A DNA stretch of 64,000 nucleotides from positions 124,001 to 188,000 of IMG/VR virus record IMGVR_UViG_3300029922_000001; one strand, written 5' to 3'. This document shows, one piece after another, positions 11,849 to 56,327 of the stretch. The number at the start of each line of letters is the position of its first letter. Within the stretch, counting starts at the first letter, position 1. Position numbers and translations under genes: made by a program. The notes under the pieces are model-generated. The model was not told the origin of the DNA. It searched no databases and was given only the letters and a program-made list of their open reading frames with translations.

Positions 11849-13190
11849 TTGAAGTTAGTCTATAAATAGACTTTATGATATTAGCTCTATTTCAACTATA
11901 CTGACTCATTAACATGTGGCATTAGCCACATGACCCACTTCCAGGGTTCTACTACGTCCTACTTTGGTAGGTCGTAGATACTTTATTGAATTCACTTTTA
12001 TTTTTGAATACTGACCATATCTACTCTTTGAGCAAATATTAGCTGATCCATTAGCATCTCTATGAATTTTATATTTACAATTAGAACAACAATAATTTCT
12101 ATTTATAACATTGTTAACATGTCCACAATTGGAACAGGTTTTACTAGAATAACTCTCGTTAATAATTTTAGTAGTCATACCGAACATTTTACCTTTTTCT
12201 TTAACATATTTAGAGAATTGTCCATGTGTCCATTGACTTATTTTTTGATTAACTTTCTTTCCTAAATTAACATTATCAGAAATATTTCTAACATCTCCAA
12301 TAGCTATGTTAGCCACTTTGTTTTCTTGGCAGAAGTTGATTACTTGTCTACTAGCTTTATGAAGTATATCTCTTTGTTGTCTTTTAAGTTTAGAAGAAGC
12401 TTTATTTTTAAGATCAGTTAATTTTTTATATCTTTTACTACCTGATTTACATCTGCTCAAGAGTTCTTCTAATGATTTATGTCTTTTATTTCTTAATTGT
12501 TTTACTGACCTTAGTTGTCTTCCTGATATTCCTATAGTTTTCCCGTCTTCGACGGTACAATAGGCAATATGAATTTCTCCCATGTCTATTCCTATCGTTT
12601 TAATCTGTCTCAATACATCTGATGGAATAATACCAGTATCCACAACTATATGAAGATAAAAGACGTTAGAATCTAAAACTAATTCAGCTATGTTAATATT
12701 TTTATTAATGAATTTACAAGGTAAATCTAATATTAAAGGTTCTGTAATTTTACCATTAGATAAATGTATTTTATTATTTTTAATTTTAATACCTAATTTT
12801 TTCCAGGTAATTGAAAATAGTTTTTTAGATTTATAAGGATATTCTGTTTTAATTTTATTATTTTCTTTTAATTCTTTTTCCCTATTTGATCTTGCAGACT
12901 CGATATTACTTTCTATTTTTTCCGCTATTGCCTGAATTGATTGACTATGGATATCATATTTTCCTTTAAATTCAAATTGTAATTCTCCTTTAGATAACCA
13001 TTTATCTTTTCTAGATTCAACATGAGCAGAGATCATATCAGAATAACATTGCCCAGCAATTTTTAATAAATGAGAACATTGTTTGATTTGTTTATTGTTT
13101 AGTGATAACTTAATAATATCAACCTTGCATGTTGTTTCTGAAAATTTTCGACCCATAATGGCACTTACTGTAAGTGCCTTATTAATTCCT
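11849..13190 (-). mobile_element. Solo-TnpB (IS1341-like) element without TnpA
   Basis: Inserted antisense in the structural operon. Right-end-like hairpin AGTCTA-TTTA-TAGACT followed by TTCAA (- strand, ending ~11849); palindrome GGCACTTAC-T-GTAAGTGCC at 13160-13178. Ends are approximate. Confidence 0.6.
11909..13156 (-). CDS. tnpB: TnpB RNA-guided endonuclease (IS200/IS605 OrfB family)
   Basis: RuvC-I IGIDMGE, RDILHKASR, RuvC-II region IAIGDV, Zn finger CSNC..CSNC, RuvC-III HRDANGSANI; 415 aa, K-rich. Confidence 0.9.
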   Translation of the reverse strand: MGRKFSETTCKVDIIKLSLNNKQIKQCSHLLKIAGQCYSDMISAHVESRKDKWLSKGELQFEFKGKYDIHSQSIQAIAEKIESNIESARSNREKELKENNKIKTEYPYKSKKLFSITWKKLGIKIKNNKIHLSNGKITEPLILDLPCKFINKNINIAELVLDSNVFYLHIVVDTGIIPSDVLRQIKTIGIDMGEIHIAYCTVEDGKTIGISGRQLRSVKQLRNKRHKSLEELLSRCKSGSKRYKKLTDLKNKASSKLKRQQRDILHKASRQVINFCQENKVANIAIGDVRNISDNVNLGKKVNQKISQWTHGQFSKYVKEKGKMFGMTTKIINESYSSKTCSNCGHVNNVINRNYCCSNCKYKIHRDANGSANICSKSRYGQYSKIKVNSIKYLRPTKVGRSRTLEVGHVANATC

Positions 13191-13245
13191 GCAAGATTTT
13201 AAATAAAAATGAAAAAACACTAAAACTCTTGTATAAAAATCAATA

Positions 13246-46203: not shown

Positions 46204-46344
46204 TATCTACTAATTCCAAATCATTAAGCTATAAACCTTAACCCAGTGTTTTGTACATTTTTTTTATAATAAGCAGGAAAAAAAATGCCAATACTGGAAC
46301 ATATTAACAGTGCTTGAGAAACAGCATAATAAACAGGAGTTACA

Positions 46345-46824
46345 ATGTCAAGATACCCAGAAAATTATTACGATACCGAATCAGGTTTACCTACTACAGT
46401 AAATAACGTTACAACCGATAAAATTTGGTTTAACGACTTGAAAGCACCAGTACAAGATATGTATGGTGATTTTCATATCGACCAAAATGTTGCAGAAAAC
46501 TTCTCCAACTGGCAAGCTTTATCAGCAGTTTTAACTACAACCGACTCTCTTATCAACAACTCAACTGGTATTTTAAGCCAAATGACTAATGGTGAATTCA
46601 CTGTTCCTAATCAAGAATGGTTCCTTTCAGTTAATCATATTACAGTTAATAGACTAGTGCGTAGACTTGGATTTATCAATAAATTATTATATAGATTCCA
46701 ACAACAAACTACAGCTTACATTGCCGACAGTATCAATGCTCCTGCAATTGGTCGTTACCCAGAAGGTTACAACGAACTTTGGGATACTCAACAGAAGTTT
46801 GGTACTCCAGAAAACGCAGAATAA
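46345..46824 (+). CDS. Hypothetical protein
   Basis: SD AGGAG; 159 aa; RYPE(N/G)Y motif near both termini. Confidence 0.75.
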   Translation: MSRYPENYYDTESGLPTTVNNVTTDKIWFNDLKAPVQDMYGDFHIDQNVAENFSNWQALSAVLTTTDSLINNSTGILSQMTNGEFTVPNQEWFLSVNHITVNRLVRRLGFINKLLYRFQQQTTAYIADSINAPAIGRYPEGYNELWDTQQKFGTPENAE

Positions 46825-47287: not shown

Positions 47288-47320
47288 AGCTTATTGTAGG
47301 TTTTTTTGTATAAAAAGAGC

Positions 47321-47839
47321 ATGAGTGTGTATTTTGTTGATTCGGAATTTTACGAAGACGGAGAAATAATAGATTTATTATCCATTGCTATCGTGGCAAA
47401 TGATAATAAACAATATTACGCTGTGAATTCTGATTTTAACTTCACTAGAGCCAATAAAAATAAATGGCTCAAGGAAAACGTCTTGAAACATATTGATTTG
47501 GAGGATAAAACAAATCAAAGAAGTAAAAAACAAATTAAATCAGATATTTTAAAATTTATTGGTGATGATAAATCCCCGAAATTTGTGTCAGATTATTGCA
47601 GCTATGATTATATTGTGTTATGTCAAATATTTGGTAAAATGATTGATCTGCCTGATAATTTTCCTATGTATTGTAATGATCTACAAATGTTAAAGAAGAT
47701 AGTTGGTGCTAAGGATTCTGAATTGCCAACTTTGCCAAACGAACATCATGCACTTAATGATGCCTGTCAAGTACGCGAACAATGGTTATTCTTAGAAAAG
47801 CGTTTTCAGGAAAAATTCAAACAAAAACTGGTTTTTTAA
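47321..47839 (+). CDS. DEDDh 3'-5' exoribonuclease (Rv2179c/RNase AS-like)
   Basis: YFVDSEFYEDG, WLKENVL, YDYIVLCQIFGKMIDLP, HHALNDA. Start at ATG 47321, 6 nt after TATAAA. Confidence 0.85.
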   Translation: MSVYFVDSEFYEDGEIIDLLSIAIVANDNKQYYAVNSDFNFTRANKNKWLKENVLKHIDLEDKTNQRSKKQIKSDILKFIGDDKSPKFVSDYCSYDYIVLCQIFGKMIDLPDNFPMYCNDLQMLKKIVGAKDSELPTLPNEHHALNDACQVREQWLFLEKRFQEKFKQKLVF

Positions 47840-47847
47840 GAATACCC

Positions 47848-47877
47848 TTGACAAACTTCAGAGATTGTGGATATAAT
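47848..47877 (+). promoter_or_regulatory. Consensus sigma70 promoter of the RNA array
   Basis: TTGACA (47848-47853), 18-nt spacer, TATAAT (47872-47877). Confidence 0.8.
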
Positions 47878-47886
47878 ATCAGTGTT

Positions 47887-47925
47887 ATGAAAACTATGGA
47901 CTTGAAACTTAAACGTAAGCGTTAA
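47887..47925 (+). CDS. Putative leader peptide MKTMDLKLKRKR
   Basis: 12 codons starting 9 nt after the -10 box; 4 Lys codons (3 AAA, 1 AAG); followed by alternative hairpins. Confidence 0.5.
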   Translation: MKTMDLKLKRKR

Positions 47926-48039
47926 TTTCTTCTCTCCCAAATTTTGCGGAGTGGAAGAATTCCTCTGCAAAAAGTCCATAATATTTTCCATCTTATTTAC
48001 TTATGTAGAGGTCATCGTGTGTAGTGATCTTTAATTTTT
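47895..48039 (+). promoter_or_regulatory. Attenuator-like structured leader
   Basis: TATGGACTT(47895)/AAGTCCATA(47972). TTTTGCGGAG(47942)/CTCTGCAAAA(47963) competes with CTTCTCTCC/GGAGTGGAAG. Hairpin TAGAGGTCAT/GTGATCTTTA plus ATTTTT at 48006-48039. Confidence 0.45.
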
Positions 48040-48046
48040 AGTATAT

Positions 48047-48117
48047 GGGGATGTAGCTCGACGGTCGAGTTAGAGCCTTTTAAGCTCAAGGCGTGGGTTC
48101 GATTCCCTCCGTCCTCA
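48047..48117 (+). tRNA. tRNA-Lys(TTT), atypical D arm
   Basis: Acceptor GGGGATG/CGTCCTC; anticodon arm GAGC-CTTTTAA-GCTC; T loop TTCGATT; no encoded CCA. Confidence 0.85.
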
Positions 48118-48127
48118 CCGAGAATAT

Positions 48128-48198
48128 GGGAAGTTAGTTCAATGGTAGAGCGGGAGAATCTAAATCTCCTAATGAGGGTTCGATTCCCTCACTTCCCA
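48128..48198 (+). tRNA. Amber suppressor-type tRNA (anticodon CTA)
   Basis: Acceptor GGGAAGT/ACTTCCC; D arm GTTC/GAGC; anticodon arm GGAGA-ATCTAAA-TCTCC; T arm GAGGG-TTCGATT-CCCTC. Confidence 0.88.
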
Positions 48199-48211
48199 CC
48201 GAGATAAATAT

Positions 48212-48284
48212 GGGAATAAAGCATAAAGGGTGATGCAGTTGGCTCTTAACCTTCAGAACCTGGGCTCGACCCCCGGTGTTCCCA
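48212..48284 (+). tRNA. Degenerate tRNA-Lys(CTT)
   Basis: Acceptor GGGAATA/TGTTCCC; loop CTCTTAA; anticodon stem with two T-T mismatches, A8 and T loop CTCGACC. Confidence 0.65.
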
Positions 48285-48294
48285 CGAGAAATAT

Positions 48295-48367
48295 GGGGAT
48301 ATAACTCAATTGGTAGAGTGGCAGACTCTTAATCTGTAAGTTTGGGGTTCAAGTCCCCATGTCCCTA
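48295..48367 (+). tRNA. tRNA-Lys(CTT)
   Basis: GGGGATA/TGTCCCT; ACTC/GAGT; GCAGA-CTCTTAA-TCTGT; TGGGG-TTCAAGT-CCCCA. Confidence 0.92.
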
Positions 48368-48376
48368 CGAGAGCAA

Positions 48377-48701
48377 TTTGAATTTTGGGAAGTTGGCTTA
48401 GAAACAGCTATCTTATAATGAGTGTCAAGTGGAATGCATCAGGACGAATATAGGTATGAGAAATCTGAATAATCTATCGTGCGCGGTAGATTAATACTGA
48501 AATTCGGTTGGTACTGATGTCGTGTCTCAGCTATCCCAGCATGAGGACGTAGAACCACAGGGGAAGGACAAGTGCAGTATTAATAATATGTTTGGTAGGC
48601 GAAGCTACCGAACTAAGTAGAGGAAGGTAAGGGATAGGATATTCTACAATGTTATTAATGACCCTTAGAGACTTTGGCGTAGTAGCACACCAAAATTCAA
48701 A
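48377..48701 (+). ncRNA. ~325-nt structured RNA containing a split mimic of 23S rRNA H43/H44 (GTPase-associated centre)
   Basis: Perfect 12-bp terminal helix TTTGAATTTTGG/CCAAAATTCAAA. 48387-48423 joined to 48677-48691 aligns without gaps to 23S nt 1054-1105 (reference recalled from memory). Several internal helices; same CGAGA trailer as the tRNAs. Confidence 0.8.
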
Positions 48702-48712
48702 ACGAGATGTAA

Positions 48713-48808
48713 GGGGGTATAGCTTAGTGGTTAAAGCTGGAGACTTTTGGAGTATTTCATGGAATATTGCAAAATCTCTAGACTAGGGTTCGATTCCCTG
48801 TGCCCCTA
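48713..48808 (+). tRNA. tRNA-Lys(TTT)-like with a 24-nt insert in the anticodon loop
   Basis: GGGGGTA/TGCCCCT; GCTT/AAGC; GGAGA-CTTTT-[48749-48772]-AA-TCTCT; TAGGG-TTCGATT-CCCTG. Confidence 0.75.
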
Positions 48809-48846
48809 CCGAGATTAAGACAAGTTTTATATGTATAAACACAAGT

Positions 48847-49176
48847 ATGTGCTGTAATAATTTTGAATATAATATACATCTAGGTCACCCTGTAGACTTA
48901 GAAATTGCCAAATACAAAACAATTAAACTTCTTCCTCGTCACCGAAAAATAAGTCCCTTAATTACGTGGATTATTAGAGATGATGATGGAACAGTACTGG
49001 GCACTACAGAAACTCATGGTTTAGAAATGAATGATCCAGAAATTAAGGGGATTTTACAAGAAGCTAAAGAAGCTTATCAATATAGAAATAGACTTTATGT
49101 TAAGTATGATACATGTAAAGATGAGTACGATAAGCTTGCCGTATTAACTACAATAAGATATGATTATCATACTTGA
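48847..49176 (+). CDS. Hypothetical protein
   Basis: 109 aa; TGTATAAA-7nt-ATG start. Confidence 0.65.
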   Translation: MCCNNFEYNIHLGHPVDLEIAKYKTIKLLPRHRKISPLITWIIRDDDGTVLGTTETHGLEMNDPEIKGILQEAKEAYQYRNRLYVKYDTCKDEYDKLAVLTTIRYDYHT

Positions 49177-50020
49177 CGATGCTGCAAACCAAGATATTAA
49201 TGATACAGTATCAATGATCGCTAGTAGAATGGGAATGAATAACGTATATCATATTCCAGATCGTGACGATTTAACATACGATGAACTTCTATGGCATATT
49301 CCCACAAAAGATGATCCTGAAAAGGCAATTTGGATCGGTTACATTCCTTTACAAGACAAATACGATGATCTTTATCAAGAATTGAAGAATAAAAACATTT
49401 ATTTAGTTAATGATCCTAAACAACATCAAAAAGCTATGGAATTTGACTTGTTTTATCCTATTATCAGAGAATACACACCACAAAGCGTAACTATAACTAA
49501 TATTGTGTCTTGTAAAACTGTTGCTAAAATTTTAGGATTTCCCATATTTGTAAAAGGTGCAATAAAATCAGAAAAAGAAAAAGGTATTAAAGCTTGTAAA
49601 GCAGACAATTTAGAAGAACTCAAAACTTTAGTAGATCCAATTTTGAAACAAACTTATAGGTCTAGAAATAAAGCTGTTTGCCGTAAATATGTCCCATTAA
49701 AATATGTTAAAAAAACTCCTGGTGATTTTCCTATAGGTAGAGAATATCGTTATTTGATGTATTGTAATAAAATTATAACAAGTGGCTATTATTGGGGCGT
49801 AGAAGATGAGTTATCTAAATTAAGTCATTCTGAAAAACAAGAAGTTGATAATTTAGCTATTATGATTTCTAAAAAATTACAAATACCTTTAATTGCTATA
49901 GATATTGGACAGCTTGATTCTGGAGAATGGATTGTAATTGAAGTTGGCGATCCCCAATGTTGTGGAGTATCACATTCGATGGCTTTTGAATTTTGGAATA
50001 AAATAGTTGTATATGAATAA
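49160..50020 (+). CDS. ATP-grasp domain protein (R2K/DUF4343-like)
   Basis: FPIFVKGAIKS, REYRY, IAIDIGQLDSGEWIVIEVGDPQCCG. Confidence 0.8.
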   Translation: MIIILDDAANQDINDTVSMIASRMGMNNVYHIPDRDDLTYDELLWHIPTKDDPEKAIWIGYIPLQDKYDDLYQELKNKNIYLVNDPKQHQKAMEFDLFYPIIREYTPQSVTITNIVSCKTVAKILGFPIFVKGAIKSEKEKGIKACKADNLEELKTLVDPILKQTYRSRNKAVCRKYVPLKYVKKTPGDFPIGREYRYLMYCNKIITSGYYWGVEDELSKLSHSEKQEVDNLAIMISKKLQIPLIAIDIGQLDSGEWIVIEVGDPQCCGVSHSMAFEFWNKIVVYE

Positions 50021-51882: not shown

Positions 51883-51908
51883 AACTTATTATATGCTATA
51901 ATAATCCC

Positions 51909-52703
51909 ATGAAACAAGATAAAGATGCTTTAGGCAACAGAATGAAGGATCATGAACACCGAACACGGATTTTACTTCCGCGTAGAACAAATACAATGAT
52001 TAGGCTTGATGGAAAAGCTTTTCATACCTTTACAAAAGGATTCAAACGTCCTTTTGATACGGATTTAATGAATATCATGAATCAAACAGCATTAGAAACA
52101 TGTTCTACAATTCAAGGTGCCAAGTTTGCTTATGTTCAATCTGATGAAATTACTATTTTGGTTACAGATTACGAAACTGATGCATGGTTTGATGGTAATA
52201 TCCAGAAGATGACATCAATTTCAGCTTCTTATGCAACATCTGCGTTCAATGCTCATTATGGTAAATACATTTACGATCAAAATCCTAGCGAGTTTGACCC
52301 CTTAAAGGTTAAAAAAGCTAATTTTGATAGCCGTGTATGGACTTTAGCTGATCCTAATGAAGTTATTAATGTTTTAATTTGGAGACAACAAGATTGTGTA
52401 AAAAATAGTATTTCTATGGCAGCACAATCAATGTTCTCTCAGAAAGAATTGCAAAATAAGCATTCTGACGACATGCAAGAGATGATGTGGCAAAAAGGCG
52501 TCAATTGGAATGATTATACTGTTGGCGAAAAGCGTGGTCGTTTTATCGAAAAGATTTCCACACAAAAGGATATCGAATACATAGATAAGCGAACTGGTGA
52601 AAAACATATCAAAGAAGGTGTTATTCGATCTAAATGGAAAGTCGTAGAACCACCAACTTTTTCAACAGACAAAGACTTTATTCGTCGTTTCATGCCCATT
52701 TAA
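51909..52703 (+). CDS. Thg1-like tRNA(His) guanylyltransferase / 3'-5' polymerase
   Basis: IRLDGKAFHTFT, AYVQSDEIT, WFDGNIQKM, FDSRV, WRQQDCVKNSI. Confidence 0.93.
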   Translation: MKQDKDALGNRMKDHEHRTRILLPRRTNTMIRLDGKAFHTFTKGFKRPFDTDLMNIMNQTALETCSTIQGAKFAYVQSDEITILVTDYETDAWFDGNIQKMTSISASYATSAFNAHYGKYIYDQNPSEFDPLKVKKANFDSRVWTLADPNEVINVLIWRQQDCVKNSISMAAQSMFSQKELQNKHSDDMQEMMWQKGVNWNDYTVGEKRGRFIEKISTQKDIEYIDKRTGEKHIKEGVIRSKWKVVEPPTFSTDKDFIRRFMPI

Positions 52704-53099: not shown

Positions 53100-54268
53100 A
53101 GGAATCTTAATATATACATAAGAATTTATATTTATGCTTATAAATAGATCTATTCAATATAGATTATATCCTAACAATAAACAAATTAAATTATTATCTA
53201 ATAATTTGGAAGGTTGTAGACTACTTTATAATCAAATGTTGAATCAAAGAAAAGAAGGATGGGAACAAGATAAGCAATCCTTTTCTTGTTATGATCAGCA
53301 AAAATATTTTAAAGATTATCTAGATAAACTAGAATATAATATTCATGCTCAAGTTAAACAAAATGTTGCCGTTAGAGTTGACTTAGCTTTTAAGGCTTTC
53401 TTTCGTAGAATTAAAAATAAAGAAAATCCAGGTTATCCTAGATTTAAATCTTTTGGTAGATATGATTCATTCACTTATCCTCAAACTGATTACGGATATA
53501 AAATTAAAGATAAACAAATATATTTATGTAAGATAGGTAATGTTAAAGTTGTTATTCATAAACAAATCACTGGATTTATCAAAACATGTACTATCAAGAA
53601 AGAAAGTGATAGATGGTTTGTTATTTTTACTTATGAAGCAGAATCAACATCTTATGAATCTTCTACTAATTTAGAGATTGGTATTGATGTAGGTTTAAAA
53701 TCTTTTGCAGTGTTCTCAGATAATACAACTATTGATAATCCTAGATTCTTTAAACAAGAAGAAAAGAATATTGGAAGATTACAAAGACGAAAAGAAAAAG
53801 CTAATGGTAATCAAAAACAAAAATTAAAGAAAGCTATTCAAAAACGTCATGCTAAAGTTAAAAATAAGAGAAAAGATTTTTGTCATAAGCTTTCGAGATC
53901 AATCGTCAATAAATATAAAATTATTTGCATTGAAGATTTAAACATTAATCAAATGAAAGAAAACATGAGATATTTATCAAAAAGTATTCATGATGCTTCT
54001 TGGAAACTATTCTTGAACTATCTAATCTATAAAGCGGAAGAAGCTGGTAGATTATTAATTCAAGTCAATCCTGCGTATACTACCCAGGATTGTAGTAAAT
54101 GTGGTTATAGAGTTAAAAAGAAGCTTTCAGATCGTATTCATAATTGTCCTAATTGTGGACTCTCTATGGATCGTGATCTAAATGCTTCCCTAAACATTTT
54201 GAGAATAGGATTATATTCTCTTGGTATTAAATCCATAGAAGATTCTTTTAATTAAGAATAGTAATCAC
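53100..54268 (+). mobile_element. Solo-TnpB (IS1341-like) element
   Basis: No TnpA. The 3' end AGAAG-ATTCTT-TTAATT-AAGAAT-AGTAATCAC resembles an IS605 right-end hairpin ending in TCAC (54265-54268). Left end not defined. Confidence 0.6.
53134..54255 (+). CDS. tnpB: TnpB RNA-guided endonuclease (IS200/IS605 OrfB), intact D-E-D triad
   Basis: HTH YRLYPN, GYPRFKS, IGIDVGL, ICIEDL, CSKC..CPNC, DRDLNASLNI. Confidence 0.95.
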   Translation: MLINRSIQYRLYPNNKQIKLLSNNLEGCRLLYNQMLNQRKEGWEQDKQSFSCYDQQKYFKDYLDKLEYNIHAQVKQNVAVRVDLAFKAFFRRIKNKENPGYPRFKSFGRYDSFTYPQTDYGYKIKDKQIYLCKIGNVKVVIHKQITGFIKTCTIKKESDRWFVIFTYEAESTSYESSTNLEIGIDVGLKSFAVFSDNTTIDNPRFFKQEEKNIGRLQRRKEKANGNQKQKLKKAIQKRHAKVKNKRKDFCHKLSRSIVNKYKIICIEDLNINQMKENMRYLSKSIHDASWKLFLNYLIYKAEEAGRLLIQVNPAYTTQDCSKCGYRVKKKLSDRIHNCPNCGLSMDRDLNASLNILRIGLYSLGIKSIEDSFN

Positions 54269-55337: not shown

Positions 55338-56279
55338 TTACTCTTCGTCGGTAACATATTTTTTATGAGCAGGGTTCTCTTTTTTAAAGATTCTAGCGTA
55401 ATATTCTTCATAAGTATTAAAAACTTCTCTTGTAGTTACAACAAAGTAAATCTTTTCAATTTGAGATTCTTGGTTTTCTTCAAAATATCTTAATACAGCA
55501 GAAATTTGAGCTAAAGCACCTTGATAAACATTAAGAGTTCCGCAATCCATAGGGGTAATAACTAAACTCTTGCATTGTATACTGTCAGCTAACAATAATG
55601 AACGGTTAGTTGCAGTAGAAATGTATTTTTCTTCTGTTAATCCTCCACCACCTGATACAATAGCGTGGGCAACACTCTTGAAAGGTAATTCTGGAATATT
55701 AGATGCATCAGTGTTGTAAACATGACCCATTTTAATAGGAACACCATTTTCATTAATTCTATTAAGTTGATTTTGTAGTTTAAAACCACTTAAAGTTTGC
55801 AATACTGGATCAAGAATTTCTAATAGGTTGTTATTTGGATATACAAGCATATCAGCTTTAACCTTATAGGGAGAAGGGACTAAATGAACAGAAATTTTCA
55901 CATTGTCAATACTAGGCTTGTAGGCTTGTGGTTTTTCATCATCATTTTTACGATAAGGTTGATAATCTTCAACGACTTCATTACCAATCACAACGTCTTC
56001 TTCGGAATTCCAATCGTACATGCTGTGTAAGAAAACACAGTTCTCATATTTACCGCGACAATTTTCATCCCACTTTTCATTATTGATATAATGTTGTTTA
56101 TTTGGGACAATATCATTAAAAACACCAATTAGAGGATTGACAAACTTTTTATTGTCTTCATCAAATTCTTCTTCCACCATGTTTTTAAAAACACAATCAT
56201 ATTGTGAATTGTCAAATATTACATAAAATGGACATTCTGCACATGCCTGTTGTATAGAAAGTATTTTTATTTTTTTCAT
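55338..56279 (-). CDS. Protein with C-terminal divergent macrodomain
   Basis: KADMLVYPNNNL, GHVYNTDA, KSVAHAIV, KSLVITPMDCG and IEKIYFVV follow macrodomain motif order; the canonical NAAN and GGG are altered. Confidence 0.75.
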   Translation of the reverse strand: MKKIKILSIQQACAECPFYVIFDNSQYDCVFKNMVEEEFDEDNKKFVNPLIGVFNDIVPNKQHYINNEKWDENCRGKYENCVFLHSMYDWNSEEDVVIGNEVVEDYQPYRKNDDEKPQAYKPSIDNVKISVHLVPSPYKVKADMLVYPNNNLLEILDPVLQTLSGFKLQNQLNRINENGVPIKMGHVYNTDASNIPELPFKSVAHAIVSGGGGLTEEKYISTATNRSLLLADSIQCKSLVITPMDCGTLNVYQGALAQISAVLRYFEENQESQIEKIYFVVTTREVFNTYEEYYARIFKKENPAHKKYVTDEE

Positions 56280-56327
56280 ATTAAAATTATACAGTAAAAA
56301 CGGTTGATCTTAAACCGTTCAAGGTGT

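What the first reader, a model, noticed from the sequence alone, without database searches (positions are those of the whole stretch)
48117..48815. Shared CGAGA 3' trailer after all six RNAs, including the non-tRNA
Seen: A-CCGAGA (48117, 48198, 48808), A-CGAGA (48284, 48367) and AA-CGAGA directly after the ncRNA terminal helix (48701). ATAT precedes the 5' G of the first four tRNAs, and none encodes a full CCA. Inference: a common 3'-processing signal, implying that the rRNA-like RNA is cut out as a dedicated array unit like a tRNA.
Basis: seen in the sequence. Interest (0 to 1): 0.6.

Follow-up and report, generated by a model that had tools for sequence, protein, structure and literature searches.

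The report
Shared CGAGA tag after phage tRNAs
In a 441-kb uncultivated phage, nearly every tRNA, tRNA-like RNA and neighbouring non-coding RNA gene is followed at once by the five bases CGAGA, most likely a lineage-specific "cut here" mark for releasing RNAs from long precursor transcripts.

Summary
All six RNA units in window 48047-48814 are followed by A-(C)CGAGA. These are six of only nine CGAGA copies on the + strand of the 64-kb window. The window lies in a 441,498-bp phage contig. Two more RNA arrays from that contig hold 16 further units: 12 are followed by CGAGA, 3 by CGAGT and 1 by nothing. A 98% relative keeps the tag on 6 of 6 units. A 59% relative keeps it on 3 of 4, with CGAGT on the fourth. 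This holds although whole tRNAs have been swapped between them. Unrelated phage arrays and 185,579 cellular genomes show no systematic use.

The tag starts -1 to +4 bases after the acceptor stem. In three tRNAs it follows a fully encoded CCA. It is therefore a 3' flank element, not a degenerate CCA.

The 326-nt non-tRNA matches no Rfam family, so "rRNA-like" is unsupported. It is a genuine structured RNA, with three compensatory pairs against the relative. Its 12-bp terminal helix is followed by an unpaired A and CGAGA.

A role in 3' processing is the best reading, but no RNA ends are available. The enzyme is unknown. An RNase AS-like 3' exoribonuclease gene lies directly upstream.

The parts
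47848..47877 (+). Sigma-70-type promoter (TTGACA, 18 nt, TATAAT; 12 of 12) for the RNA operon
   Evidence: Identical in L017 and L018 and nearly identical in L020.
47879..48039 (+). Conserved structured leader RNA ending in a terminator-like hairpin with a U-run (48007-48039). It carries no CGAGA tag.
   Evidence: Conserved in the 59% relative L020. No Rfam match.
48047..48117 (+). tRNA-Lys(UUU), unit 1
   Evidence: Rfam tRNA 54.5 bits, ARAGORN
48118..48123 (+). Trailer CCGAGA of unit 1, followed by ATAT
48128..48198 (+). tRNA with anticodon CUA (amber suppressor), unit 2
   Evidence: Rfam 66.7 bits, ARAGORN
48199..48204 (+). Trailer CCGAGA of unit 2, followed by TAAATAT
48212..48284 (+). tRNA(CUU) with a weak anticodon stem and an atypical T-loop, unit 3
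   Evidence: Rfam 45 bits; missed by ARAGORN. The T-loop is canonical in L017.
48285..48289 (+). Trailer CGAGA of unit 3, followed by AATAT
48295..48367 (+). tRNA-Lys(CUU), unit 4
   Evidence: Rfam 68.9 bits
48368..48372 (+). Trailer CGAGA of unit 4, followed by GCAA
48377..48702 (+). 326-nt structured non-coding RNA of no known family, unit 5. It has a 12-bp terminal helix (48377-48388 with 48690-48701) and an unpaired A at 48702.
   Evidence: No Rfam match at E<=10. Against L017, 26 columns differ; three pairs are compensated on both sides and no predicted pair is broken. Fold z = -2.4. No paralogue in the fetched loci.
48703..48707 (+). Trailer CGAGA of the ncRNA, followed by TGTAA
48713..48808 (+). 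tRNA-like unit 6. It is a cloverleaf in which a 24-27 nt insertion turns the anticodon arm into a 17-bp rod. It could be an intron-bearing tRNA-Lys(UUU).
   Evidence: Rfam 55.4 bits with a 27-nt insert; fold
48809..48814 (+). Trailer CCGAGA of the last unit, kept although no RNA unit follows
47300..47839 (+). DEDDh 3'-5' exoribonuclease of the Rv2179c / RNase AS family, directly upstream of the operon promoter. It is a candidate trimming enzyme (inference).
   Evidence: Pfam PF16473 36 bits, above the cut-off of 27. PDB 4oke/4hec E 1e-21 to 3e-22, with D-x-E, YD and H...D motifs aligned. NCBIfam RNase_AS 122 bits, below the cut-off of 200.
51885..52703 (+). Thg1-like protein (3'-5' nucleotidyl transferase family, tRNA 5'-end repair); context only
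   Evidence: Pfam PF04446 E 1e-30

Best explanation
CGAG(A/U) is a lineage-specific RNA punctuation element. It defines or assists 3'-end formation of every product of this phage's polycistronic tRNA/ncRNA operons.

Proposed path:
- One sigma-70-type promoter drives a precursor (promoter shown by consensus only).
- RNase P cuts at the AU|G junction in front of each unit (inferred from the A/U-rich leaders ending in U).
- The upstream unit is left with a trailer of about 9-13 nt that starts with CGAGA, within -1 to +4 nt of the acceptor helix.
- An endonuclease that recognises CGAG next to a helix end cuts at or beside the tag, and/or 3' exonucleases trim back to it. The candidate exonuclease is the RNase AS-like DEDDh enzyme encoded directly upstream.
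- A CCA-adding enzyme then completes ends that carry only N73 or N73-C. The three tRNAs that encode CCA would be mature after a cut at the 5' edge of the tag.

The 326-nt ncRNA presents the same end geometry as a tRNA. Its 12-bp terminal helix has the length of the acceptor and T-arm stack (an inference), and it is followed by an unpaired A and then CGAGA. It would therefore be released by the same route.

Shown here: the motif, its anchoring to 3' ends, its conservation, and the RNA structure of the ncRNA. Inferred: every enzymatic step.
For: - Six of six units in the window carry the tag.
- Sixteen further units lie in two other arrays of the same contig: 12 have CGAGA, 3 CGAGT, 1 none. In L103 the tag occurs 11 times on the array strand and 0 times on the other strand.
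- The tag is conserved in L017 (6 of 6) and in L020 (3 CGAGA plus 1 CGAGT), although tRNA cassettes differ and the A/T part of the spacers varies in length and sequence.
- Orthologous tRNAs differ in C versus CC before GAGA (L017 unit 2 against L020 unit 2), so the pentamer is the constrained part, not the partial CCA.
- In long spacers the tag stays beside the upstream 3' end: 10 nt in L017, 11 and 51 nt in L020, 104 nt in L103. Terminal units keep it.
- Three tRNAs read N73-CCA-CGAG.
- Controls: of 72 tRNAs in unrelated phage arrays, only the 3 that the search pattern itself selected carry it. No other IMG/VR phage uses it systematically. The genome scan gave 63 scattered single hits and no clade.
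- The ncRNA helix is maintained by an A-U to G-C double change and by G-U wobbles in L017.
- A 3' exoribonuclease gene adjoins the operon in the window, L017 and L020. A homologue in L022 lies two genes from a PolyA_pol/CCA-adding family gene.
Against: - There are no transcript data, so no mature end is known.
- The register relative to the acceptor stem varies from -1 to +4. A single fixed cut therefore cannot give correct ends for all units, and extra trimming must be assumed.
- No nuclease with this specificity is identified.
- The founder of the exonuclease family is poly(A)-specific (name of the NCBIfam model), which does not obviously fit these trailers.
- CGAGA is not specifically avoided in mRNAs. 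There are 8 copies outside the array against 29 expected from dinucleotides, but 10.2 expected from a third-order model, and all CGAGN words are rare. Sense and antisense counts are about equal.
- Two copies precede first tRNAs with no obvious upstream RNA (L006 1003; L103 reverse strand 6215).
- One unit (L006 about 1450-1612) lacks the tag.
- The second and third arrays are known from one genome only.
Confidence: 0.55

Rival explanations
1. The tag is a brake or binding site rather than a cleavage site. It stops or paces 3'-5' exonucleases, with a C next to a helix as in the RNase T 'C effect', or it binds a protein that protects the 3' end until CCA is added.
For: The tag always lies within 4 nt of a helix end. 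A DEDDh exoribonuclease is encoded next to the operon. The variable register is easier to accept for a brake than for a precise cut.
Against: After an encoded CCA, a stop at the C of the tag would leave CCA-C, which is not a functional end. The RNase T rule would constrain only the C, yet GAG is invariant as well. The C effect is recalled from the literature, not tested here.
Confidence: 0.15
2. The tag belongs to the 5' leader of the next unit. It would be part of an optimised RNase P leader (CGAGA plus a 4-7 nt A/U stretch ending in U) and not of the upstream trailer.
For: Most copies lie 4-7 nt upstream of the next +1 G. Two copies precede the first tRNA or RNA of an array without an upstream RNA unit: L006 1003-1007 and L103 reverse strand 6215.
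Against: With spacers of 10, 11, 51 and 104 nt the tag stays at the upstream 3' end and not near the next +1. The last units of arrays keep it with nothing downstream. The first tRNAs of the window, L017, L020 and the first L103 array lack it.
Confidence: 0.12
3. The tag is a DNA-level joint. It would be the boundary of mobile RNA-gene cassettes, or a recombination or target site through which units are gained, lost and exchanged. The ncRNA would be an inserted element flanked by ACGAGA.
For: The window, L017 and L020 differ by whole units with breakpoints in the spacers. ACGAGA flanks the ncRNA on both sides (48367-48372 and 48702-48707), and the ncRNA is absent from L020. Two TnpB genes lie in the window.
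Against: The left ACGAGA is separated from the terminal helix by GCAA, so it is not a clean target-site duplication. In L017 the terminal helix holds G-U pairs and an A-U to G-C change, as expected for RNA pairing and not for transposase-bound inverted repeats. No transposase or integrase of a cassette type lies next to any array. The tag is strand-specific, tied to RNA 3' ends, and retained between orthologous neighbours whose spacers diverged.
Confidence: 0.12
4. The tag has no function and is a relic of tandem duplication of one ancestral tRNA plus spacer, or a chance match.
For: tRNA arrays often grow by duplication. Tandem tRNA-Glu copies in Butyricimonas carry identical CCGAGA trailers for that reason.
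Against: The tRNA bodies are only 55-73% identical while the tag is identical. The tag follows unrelated non-tRNA units. It is kept at 59% protein divergence while neighbouring spacer bases changed. The chance probability is about 7e-25.
Confidence: 0.02

Closest known systems
Phage T4 tRNA gene cluster (eight tRNAs plus two small stable RNAs; some tRNAs lack encoded CCA; processed by RNase P, RNase BN/Z, exonucleases and the CCA-adding enzyme). Recalled from the literature, not tested here.
   Same: A phage operon mixes tRNAs with non-tRNA stable RNAs. The CCA is incomplete or absent, so 3' trimming and CCA addition are needed. Spacers are very short.
   Different: No shared trailer word is known for T4. 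Here one pentamer follows almost every unit genome-wide, including units that do encode CCA.
Theta ribozymes: minimal HDV-like self-cleaving ribozymes directly 3' of phage tRNAs, often suppressor tRNAs (bioRxiv 10.1101/2023.06.13.544163)
   Same: A phage-specific device sits within a few nucleotides of the tRNA 3' end, is proposed to remove the 3' trailer, and is associated with CUA suppressor tRNAs.
   Different: A ribozyme fold needs tens of nucleotides downstream of the cut. Here the whole spacer is 9-13 nt and is followed at once by the next tRNA. Rfam finds no HDV-like or other ribozyme on the + strand. The environment here appears to be non-gut, whereas most theta ribozymes come from gut viromes.
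RNase E-dependent maturation of polycistronic tRNA transcripts in E. coli, including one-step cleavage right after CCA of the proline tRNAs (PMC5291269, abstract seen)
   Same: An endonuclease cuts in the short spacer next to the 3' end and can produce the mature terminus directly.
   Different: RNase E sites are loosely defined A/U-rich stretches, not an invariant G/C-containing pentamer. Nothing similar was found in 185,579 cellular genomes.
tRNA punctuation and tRNA-like 't-elements' in mitochondrial transcripts (PMC3790967, PMC1920247; abstracts seen)
   Same: tRNA or tRNA-like structures serve as processing marks that also release neighbouring non-tRNA RNAs.
   Different: There the structure is the signal. 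Here a sequence word is added to the structure, and it also follows non-tRNA-like units.
Sequence-specific phage endoribonuclease RegB of T4, which cuts GGAG (recalled from the literature)
   Same: It is a precedent for a phage enzyme that recognises a 4-5 nt purine-rich word in RNA.
   Different: RegB acts on early mRNAs at Shine-Dalgarno sites, not on tRNA trailers. No RegB-like gene was identified here.

Membership tests
tRNA (Rfam RF00005) | Cloverleaf covariance-model score at or above the gathering threshold of 29 bits | tested here: met
   The five units score 45-68.9 bits.
tRNA (decoding-competent) | A 7-nt anticodon loop on a 5-bp stem | tested here: not met
   This applies to unit 48713-48808 only. 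A 27-nt insert gives a 17-bp rod capped by a 4-nt loop. The other four units meet the feature.
Any described RNA family for the 326-nt unit (rRNA, RNase P RNA, tmRNA, group I/II intron, 6S, GOLLD/ROOL, Y RNA and others) | A match to an Rfam 15 covariance model | tested here: not met
   No match overlaps 48369-48712 even at E<=10 with permissive filters. 'rRNA-like' is therefore unsupported.
Structured functional RNA (generic) | Base pairs maintained by compensatory change between relatives | tested here: met
   Three double compensations occur, and 0 of 26 differing columns breaks a predicted pair. This rests on only two sequences.
Theta / HDV-like ribozyme 3' of a tRNA | A nested double-pseudoknot fold of about 50 nt or more, starting at the cleavage site within 5 nt of the tRNA end | tested here: not met
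   Spacers are 9-13 nt. The only drz hit is 11.3 bits, E 4, on the opposite strand.
RNase Z substrate of the Bacillus type (rule recalled from the literature) | No C at positions 74/75; U soon after the discriminator | tested here: not met
   All six units have C at the first trailer position, and three have CC. The host and its RNase Z are unknown, so this does not exclude RNase Z.
Miniature inverted-repeat element (for the ncRNA) | Terminal inverted repeats directly flanked by a target-site duplication | tested here: not met
   There is a 12-bp inverted repeat, but the left ACGAGA is 4 nt away from it. The L017 copy has G-U 'mismatches' that fit RNA pairing.
Rv2179c / RNase AS 3'-5' exoribonuclease family (ORF 47300-47839) | A Pfam PF16473 match above the cut-off, with the DEDDh catalytic residues | tested here: met
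   36 bits against a cut-off of 27. PDB 4oke E 1e-21, with D-x-E, YD and H..D aligned.
RNase AS equivalog (poly(A)-specific) | NCBIfam NF033638 score at or above 200 | tested here: not met
   122 bits. The protein is a family member, but the same specificity cannot be assumed.
Genome-wide RNA processing signal | Present at the 3' ends of most stable RNAs of the genome and conserved in relatives | tested here: met
   21 of 22 units in three arrays carry it. In relatives the counts are 6 of 6 and 4 of 4, counting CGAGT.
Genome-wide RNA processing signal | The word is avoided in mRNAs | tested here: inconclusive
   There are 8 copies against 29 expected from dinucleotides, but 10.2 from a third-order model, and there is no sense/antisense bias.
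Genome-wide RNA processing signal | Mature RNA ends map at the word | not testable with these tools
   No transcript data are available.

The most novel reading that the evidence does not exclude
The phage carries its own CGAG-specific endoribonuclease activity. This could be a protein, or an RNA such as the 326-nt array RNA or the conserved leader RNA. Together with the phage-encoded RNase AS-like exonuclease, Thg1-like enzyme, RNA ligase and Tpt1, it would form a self-contained tRNA maturation, splicing and repair system. That system would be independent of host RNase Z/E and would also release a set of new non-coding RNAs from tRNA-like scaffolds.
Probability: 0.2. Interest if true: 0.8.

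Novelty: new variant of a known kind. Interest (0 to 1): 0.6.

Why it matters
Bacterial and phage tRNA 3' ends are thought to be defined by structure-measuring enzymes (RNase Z, exonucleases) and by loosely specified RNase E sites. An invariant sequence word at nearly every stable-RNA 3' end of a genome would be a different logic. It would be closer to repeat-guided processing, and it points to an unknown sequence-specific RNase or an unknown determinant of a known one.

The tag is also practical. It marks where stable RNAs end in this lineage, and it already flags several unannotated non-tRNA and tRNA-like RNAs. It gives a simple handle (mutate five bases) for asking how huge phages mature their own tRNAs, including a CUA suppressor and several tRNA-Lys genes that may matter in conflicts with host anticodon nucleases.

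Tried and rejected
- **Annotated phages:** blastn of the array and tblastn of a neighbouring protein against 50,697 records gave no match.
- **Exact-word scans:** scans of IMG/VR with leader and ncRNA words, and of JGI metagenomes with a leader word, returned only the source contig and chance hits.
- **Synteny walks from the exoribonuclease:** homologues at 37-48% identity (L022, L025, L032, L033) had no RNA array nearby.
- **Second array:** its flanking protein led only to an identical strain (L036) and to a 50% relative without the array (L034). The second array therefore has no comparative support.
- **R2K protein:** its homologues gave only another copy of the L017 array (L106) and an unrelated context (L107).
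- **Host mimicry:** the genome scan gave 63 scattered single hits, mostly in high-GC taxa, and duplicated tRNA-Glu genes in Butyricimonas. Rejected.
- **Avoidance of CGAGA in mRNAs:** the apparent depletion is explained by a general rarity of CGAG words. Inconclusive.
- **A guide for the tag:** by eye, no complementary stretch (UCUCG or wobble variants) was seen outside helices in the ncRNA or the leader. This was not scanned by a tool.
- **The conserved 163-aa ORF upstream (46333-46824) as a nuclease candidate:** it has no Pfam, PHROG or NCBIfam match and only a weak lectin-repeat similarity in the PDB. Dropped.
- **Covariance model of the ncRNA:** not built. Two near-identical sequences of 335 columns would be uninformative and too slow to calibrate.
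- **TAG recoding in the window:** there are no in-frame TAG read-through candidates.
Full report
**What is there**

The window is part of IMG/VR contig IMGVR_UViG_3300029922_000001, which is 441,498 bp. The gene at 47300-47839 maps to contig position 171,300. It is an uncultivated huge phage with about 34% G+C. It has very large ORFs, a major-head-like protein, helicases, DnaJ-like proteins and two TnpB genes. No annotated phage record is similar.

Downstream of a perfect sigma-70-type promoter (47848-47877) lies a conserved structured leader. It is followed by six tightly packed RNA units on the + strand. Rfam recognises five as tRNA:
- 48047-48117, Lys UUU
- 48128-48198, CUA suppressor
- 48212-48284, CUU, degenerate
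- 48295-48367, Lys CUU
- 48713-48808, with a 27-nt insert in the anticodon arm

ARAGORN finds four of these. Between the fourth and fifth tRNA lies a 326-nt RNA (48377-48702) that matches no Rfam family, even at E<=10.

**The observation**

Each unit ends with an unpaired A, followed by CCGAGA (units 1, 2, 6) or CGAGA (units 3, 4 and the ncRNA).

The + strand of the whole 64-kb window holds nine CGAGA copies, and six are these trailers. Given the background frequency, six of six in one of two registers has a probability near 7e-25.

The tRNA bodies are only 55-73% identical to one another, and the ncRNA is unrelated to them. Recent duplication therefore does not explain the identical trailers.

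**Other tRNAs of the same genome**

Pattern scans of IMG/VR brought in two further loci of the same contig.

L006 (contig 388,306-399,400) has a promoter followed by units that end in ACGAGA four times, CCGAGA once and CTCCGAGT once. Three of these units are not tRNA-like at all.

L103 (contig 243,102-257,836, arrays on the minus strand) has ten tRNA or tRNA-like units. Eight are followed by CGAGA and two by CGAGT. One more CGAGA plus TAAATAT stands in front of a tRNA-Cys. In L103 the pentamer occurs 11 times on the array strand and never on the other strand.

In all, 21 of 22 units in three arrays carry CGAG(A/T).

The distance from the last acceptor pair to the C of the tag ranges from -1 to +4. 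Three tRNAs read N73-CCA and then CGAG. The tag is therefore not a decayed CCA. It follows whatever part of the CCA is encoded: none, C, or CCA.

**Relatives**

The exoribonuclease gene upstream served as the handle.

L017 (Logan ERR11443616, 98% protein identity; L106 is the same array) has five tRNAs plus the ncRNA. All are followed by A-(C)CGAGA. The tRNAs at positions 1, 2 and 6 are different cassettes from those in the window. For example, its last unit is an insert-free CUA suppressor.

L020 (ENA ERZ12293048, 59% identity) has four tRNAs with trailers CCGAGA, CGAGA, CGAGT and CGAGA. It lacks the ncRNA, and a 51-nt hairpin spacer stands in its place.

The A/T part of the spacers varies (ATAT, TAAATAT, a 10-nt and an 11-nt version), while the pentamer does not.

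One orthologous tRNA has CC before GAGA in L017 and C in L020. The constrained element is therefore the pentamer itself.

Where spacers are long (10, 11, 51 and 104 nt), the tag stays at the upstream 3' end. The last units of arrays keep it, and the first tRNAs of three arrays lack an upstream copy. This anchors the tag to 3' ends rather than to the next unit's leader.

**Controls**

- Of 72 tRNAs in unrelated phage arrays, only the three that the search pattern itself had selected carry the tag.
- A stricter two-tag pattern found no other IMG/VR phage with systematic use.
- The same pattern in one genome per 185,579 species gave 63 scattered hits. These were mostly in high-GC taxa, plus duplicated tRNA-Glu genes in Butyricimonas, with no clade using it.

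The feature is therefore specific to this phage lineage, and host mimicry is not supported.

**The non-tRNA unit**

Its ends form a perfect 12-bp helix, then one unpaired A, then CGAGA.

Against L017, 26 alignment columns differ. Three predicted pairs changed on both sides and stayed paired, including A-U to G-C in the terminal helix. Several others switched between G-C and G-U, and none broke a predicted pair.

This supports a functional structured RNA. It argues against a transposon-like inverted repeat, since the L017 helix contains G-U pairs.

The 12-bp length equals the stacked acceptor and T arms of a tRNA, the 'minihelix' that RNase P, RNase Z and CCA-adding enzymes are known to accept. 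That is my inference from general knowledge, not a test.

'rRNA-like' has no support. No paralogue exists in the fetched loci.

**Mechanism**

The most likely reading is a 3'-end processing mark on a polycistronic precursor.
- RNase P would cut at the AU|G junctions.
- The remaining 9-13-nt trailer, which begins with the tag, would be removed by a cut at or beside CGAG and/or by exonucleolytic trimming.
- A CCA-adding enzyme would finish ends that carry only N73 or N73-C.

A cut at the 5' edge of the tag would directly yield mature ends for the three CCA-encoding tRNAs. It would also yield CCA-adding-competent ends for most of the others.

The variable register means that some units would still need trimming: offset 0 or -1, or the UUA before the tag in one unit.

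The enzyme is unknown. The gene immediately upstream of the promoter belongs to the Rv2179c / RNase AS family of DEDDh 3'-5' exoribonucleases. The support is Pfam above the cut-off, PDB 4oke at E 1e-21, and aligned catalytic motifs. It scores below the NCBIfam equivalog cut-off. Its synteny with the operon holds in L017 and L020. A homologue in L022 sits two genes from a PolyA_pol/CCA-adding family gene. That makes it a candidate trimming enzyme, no more.

I found no specific avoidance of the word in mRNAs. The apparent depletion reflects a general rarity of CGAG. This is neutral to mildly negative for a potent endonuclease model.

**Rivals**

I considered four rivals: an exonuclease brake or protein-binding tag, part of the RNase P leader of the next unit, a DNA-level cassette joint, and a duplication relic. 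Each is weighed in its own section. None fits the anchoring to 3' ends, the conservation across cassette replacement and the presence after encoded CCA as well as the processing reading does. None of the first three is excluded.

**Comparison with known systems**

The T4 tRNA cluster, recalled from the literature, also mixes tRNAs with two stable RNAs and has CCA-less tRNAs. No shared trailer word is known there.

Theta ribozymes are minimal HDV-like ribozymes placed within a few nucleotides of phage tRNA 3' ends and are proposed to process trailers (bioRxiv 10.1101/2023.06.13.544163). They are the closest idea. The spacers here are far too short for a ribozyme, and Rfam sees none.

RNase E can generate mature CCA ends in one step for the E. 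coli proline tRNAs (PMC5291269, abstract seen), but it has no invariant pentamer.

I therefore rate this as a new variant of a known kind: polycistronic tRNA operon processing with an added sequence tag.

**Verdict**

A common 3' signal shared by tRNAs and non-tRNAs is well supported by comparative and genome-wide evidence. Processing itself is not shown, and the 'rRNA-like' label is rejected.
- Interest is 0.6.

Noticed in passing
window 48713-48808; L006 1287-1375; L103 10195-10293(-), 8332-8423(-), 2787-2892(-): Five tRNA-like genes of this genome carry 17-31 nt insertions. Each insertion turns the anticodon arm into a long rod: the normal 5-7 bp stem, a one-base bulge on the 5' side, then more helix. 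All five fold far better than shuffles (z -3.4 to -5.2). For the window copy, removing 24 nt would leave the loop CUUUUAA of tRNA-Lys(UUU). They may be non-group-I tRNA introns or non-decoding tRNA mimics.
   Followed up: partly
L103 10802-11362(-); L035 1-37; window 51885-52703 and 55338-56309; L103 5840-6352(-): The genome encodes Tpt1/KptA RNA 2'-phosphotransferase directly upstream of the third tRNA array. It also encodes an RNA ligase (PF09414) with NUDIX near the second array, a Thg1-like enzyme, a Macro-domain protein and NADAR. Together with the insert-bearing tRNAs, this looks like a phage-borne tRNA splicing or repair set.
   Followed up: partly
window 47879-48039: The leader RNA between the promoter and the first tRNA is almost unchanged in the 59% relative L020. 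It folds into a Y shape followed by a terminator-like hairpin and a U-run, matches no Rfam family and has no CGAGA tag. It could be an attenuator or a separate small RNA.
   Followed up: partly
L017 4730-4860 and L020 2885-3005, against window 48040: A 41-codon ORF lies between the leader hairpin and the first tRNA in both relatives. It is cleanly deleted in the window.
   Followed up: no
window 48128-48198 and all ORFs: The array encodes a CUA (amber) suppressor tRNA. None of 37 window ORFs ends in TAG (34 TAA, 3 TGA). No in-frame TAG read-through candidate exists in the window. TAG may be recoded, or merely avoided, elsewhere in the genome.
   Followed up: partly
window 48047-48808: Three, possibly four, of the five tRNAs are tRNA-Lys (UUU, CUU, CUU, and perhaps the insert-bearing unit). 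L017 and L020 are likewise rich in Lys tRNAs. This may be a supply or decoy against host nucleases that cut the tRNA-Lys anticodon (speculation from the literature).
   Followed up: no
window 11909-13198(-) and 53122-54255(+): There are two TnpB (OrfB_IS605 / Cas12f-like TNB) genes in the phage genome. No TnpA was seen next to them.
   Followed up: no
L006 1008-1182 and 1384-1449: Three short non-tRNA units (about 55, 100 and 60 nt) lie between CGAGA tags in the second array and are predicted to form hairpins. They are unannotated small RNAs of unknown function.
   Followed up: partly
L103 reverse-strand position 2734: A CGAGA copy lies a few bases after an intrinsic-terminator-like hairpin and T-run. 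This suggests the tag may also occur at some mRNA 3' ends.
   Followed up: no
window 49157-50020: The nearest cellular homologues of the R2K-clade ATP-grasp protein just downstream of the array are in Nostocales cyanobacteria (44-46% identity). This is a weak hint about the host.
   Followed up: no
window 48815-49156: About 330 bp between the last tRNA-like unit and the ATP-grasp gene is absent from L017. It holds a 129-codon ORF with no family match.
   Followed up: no
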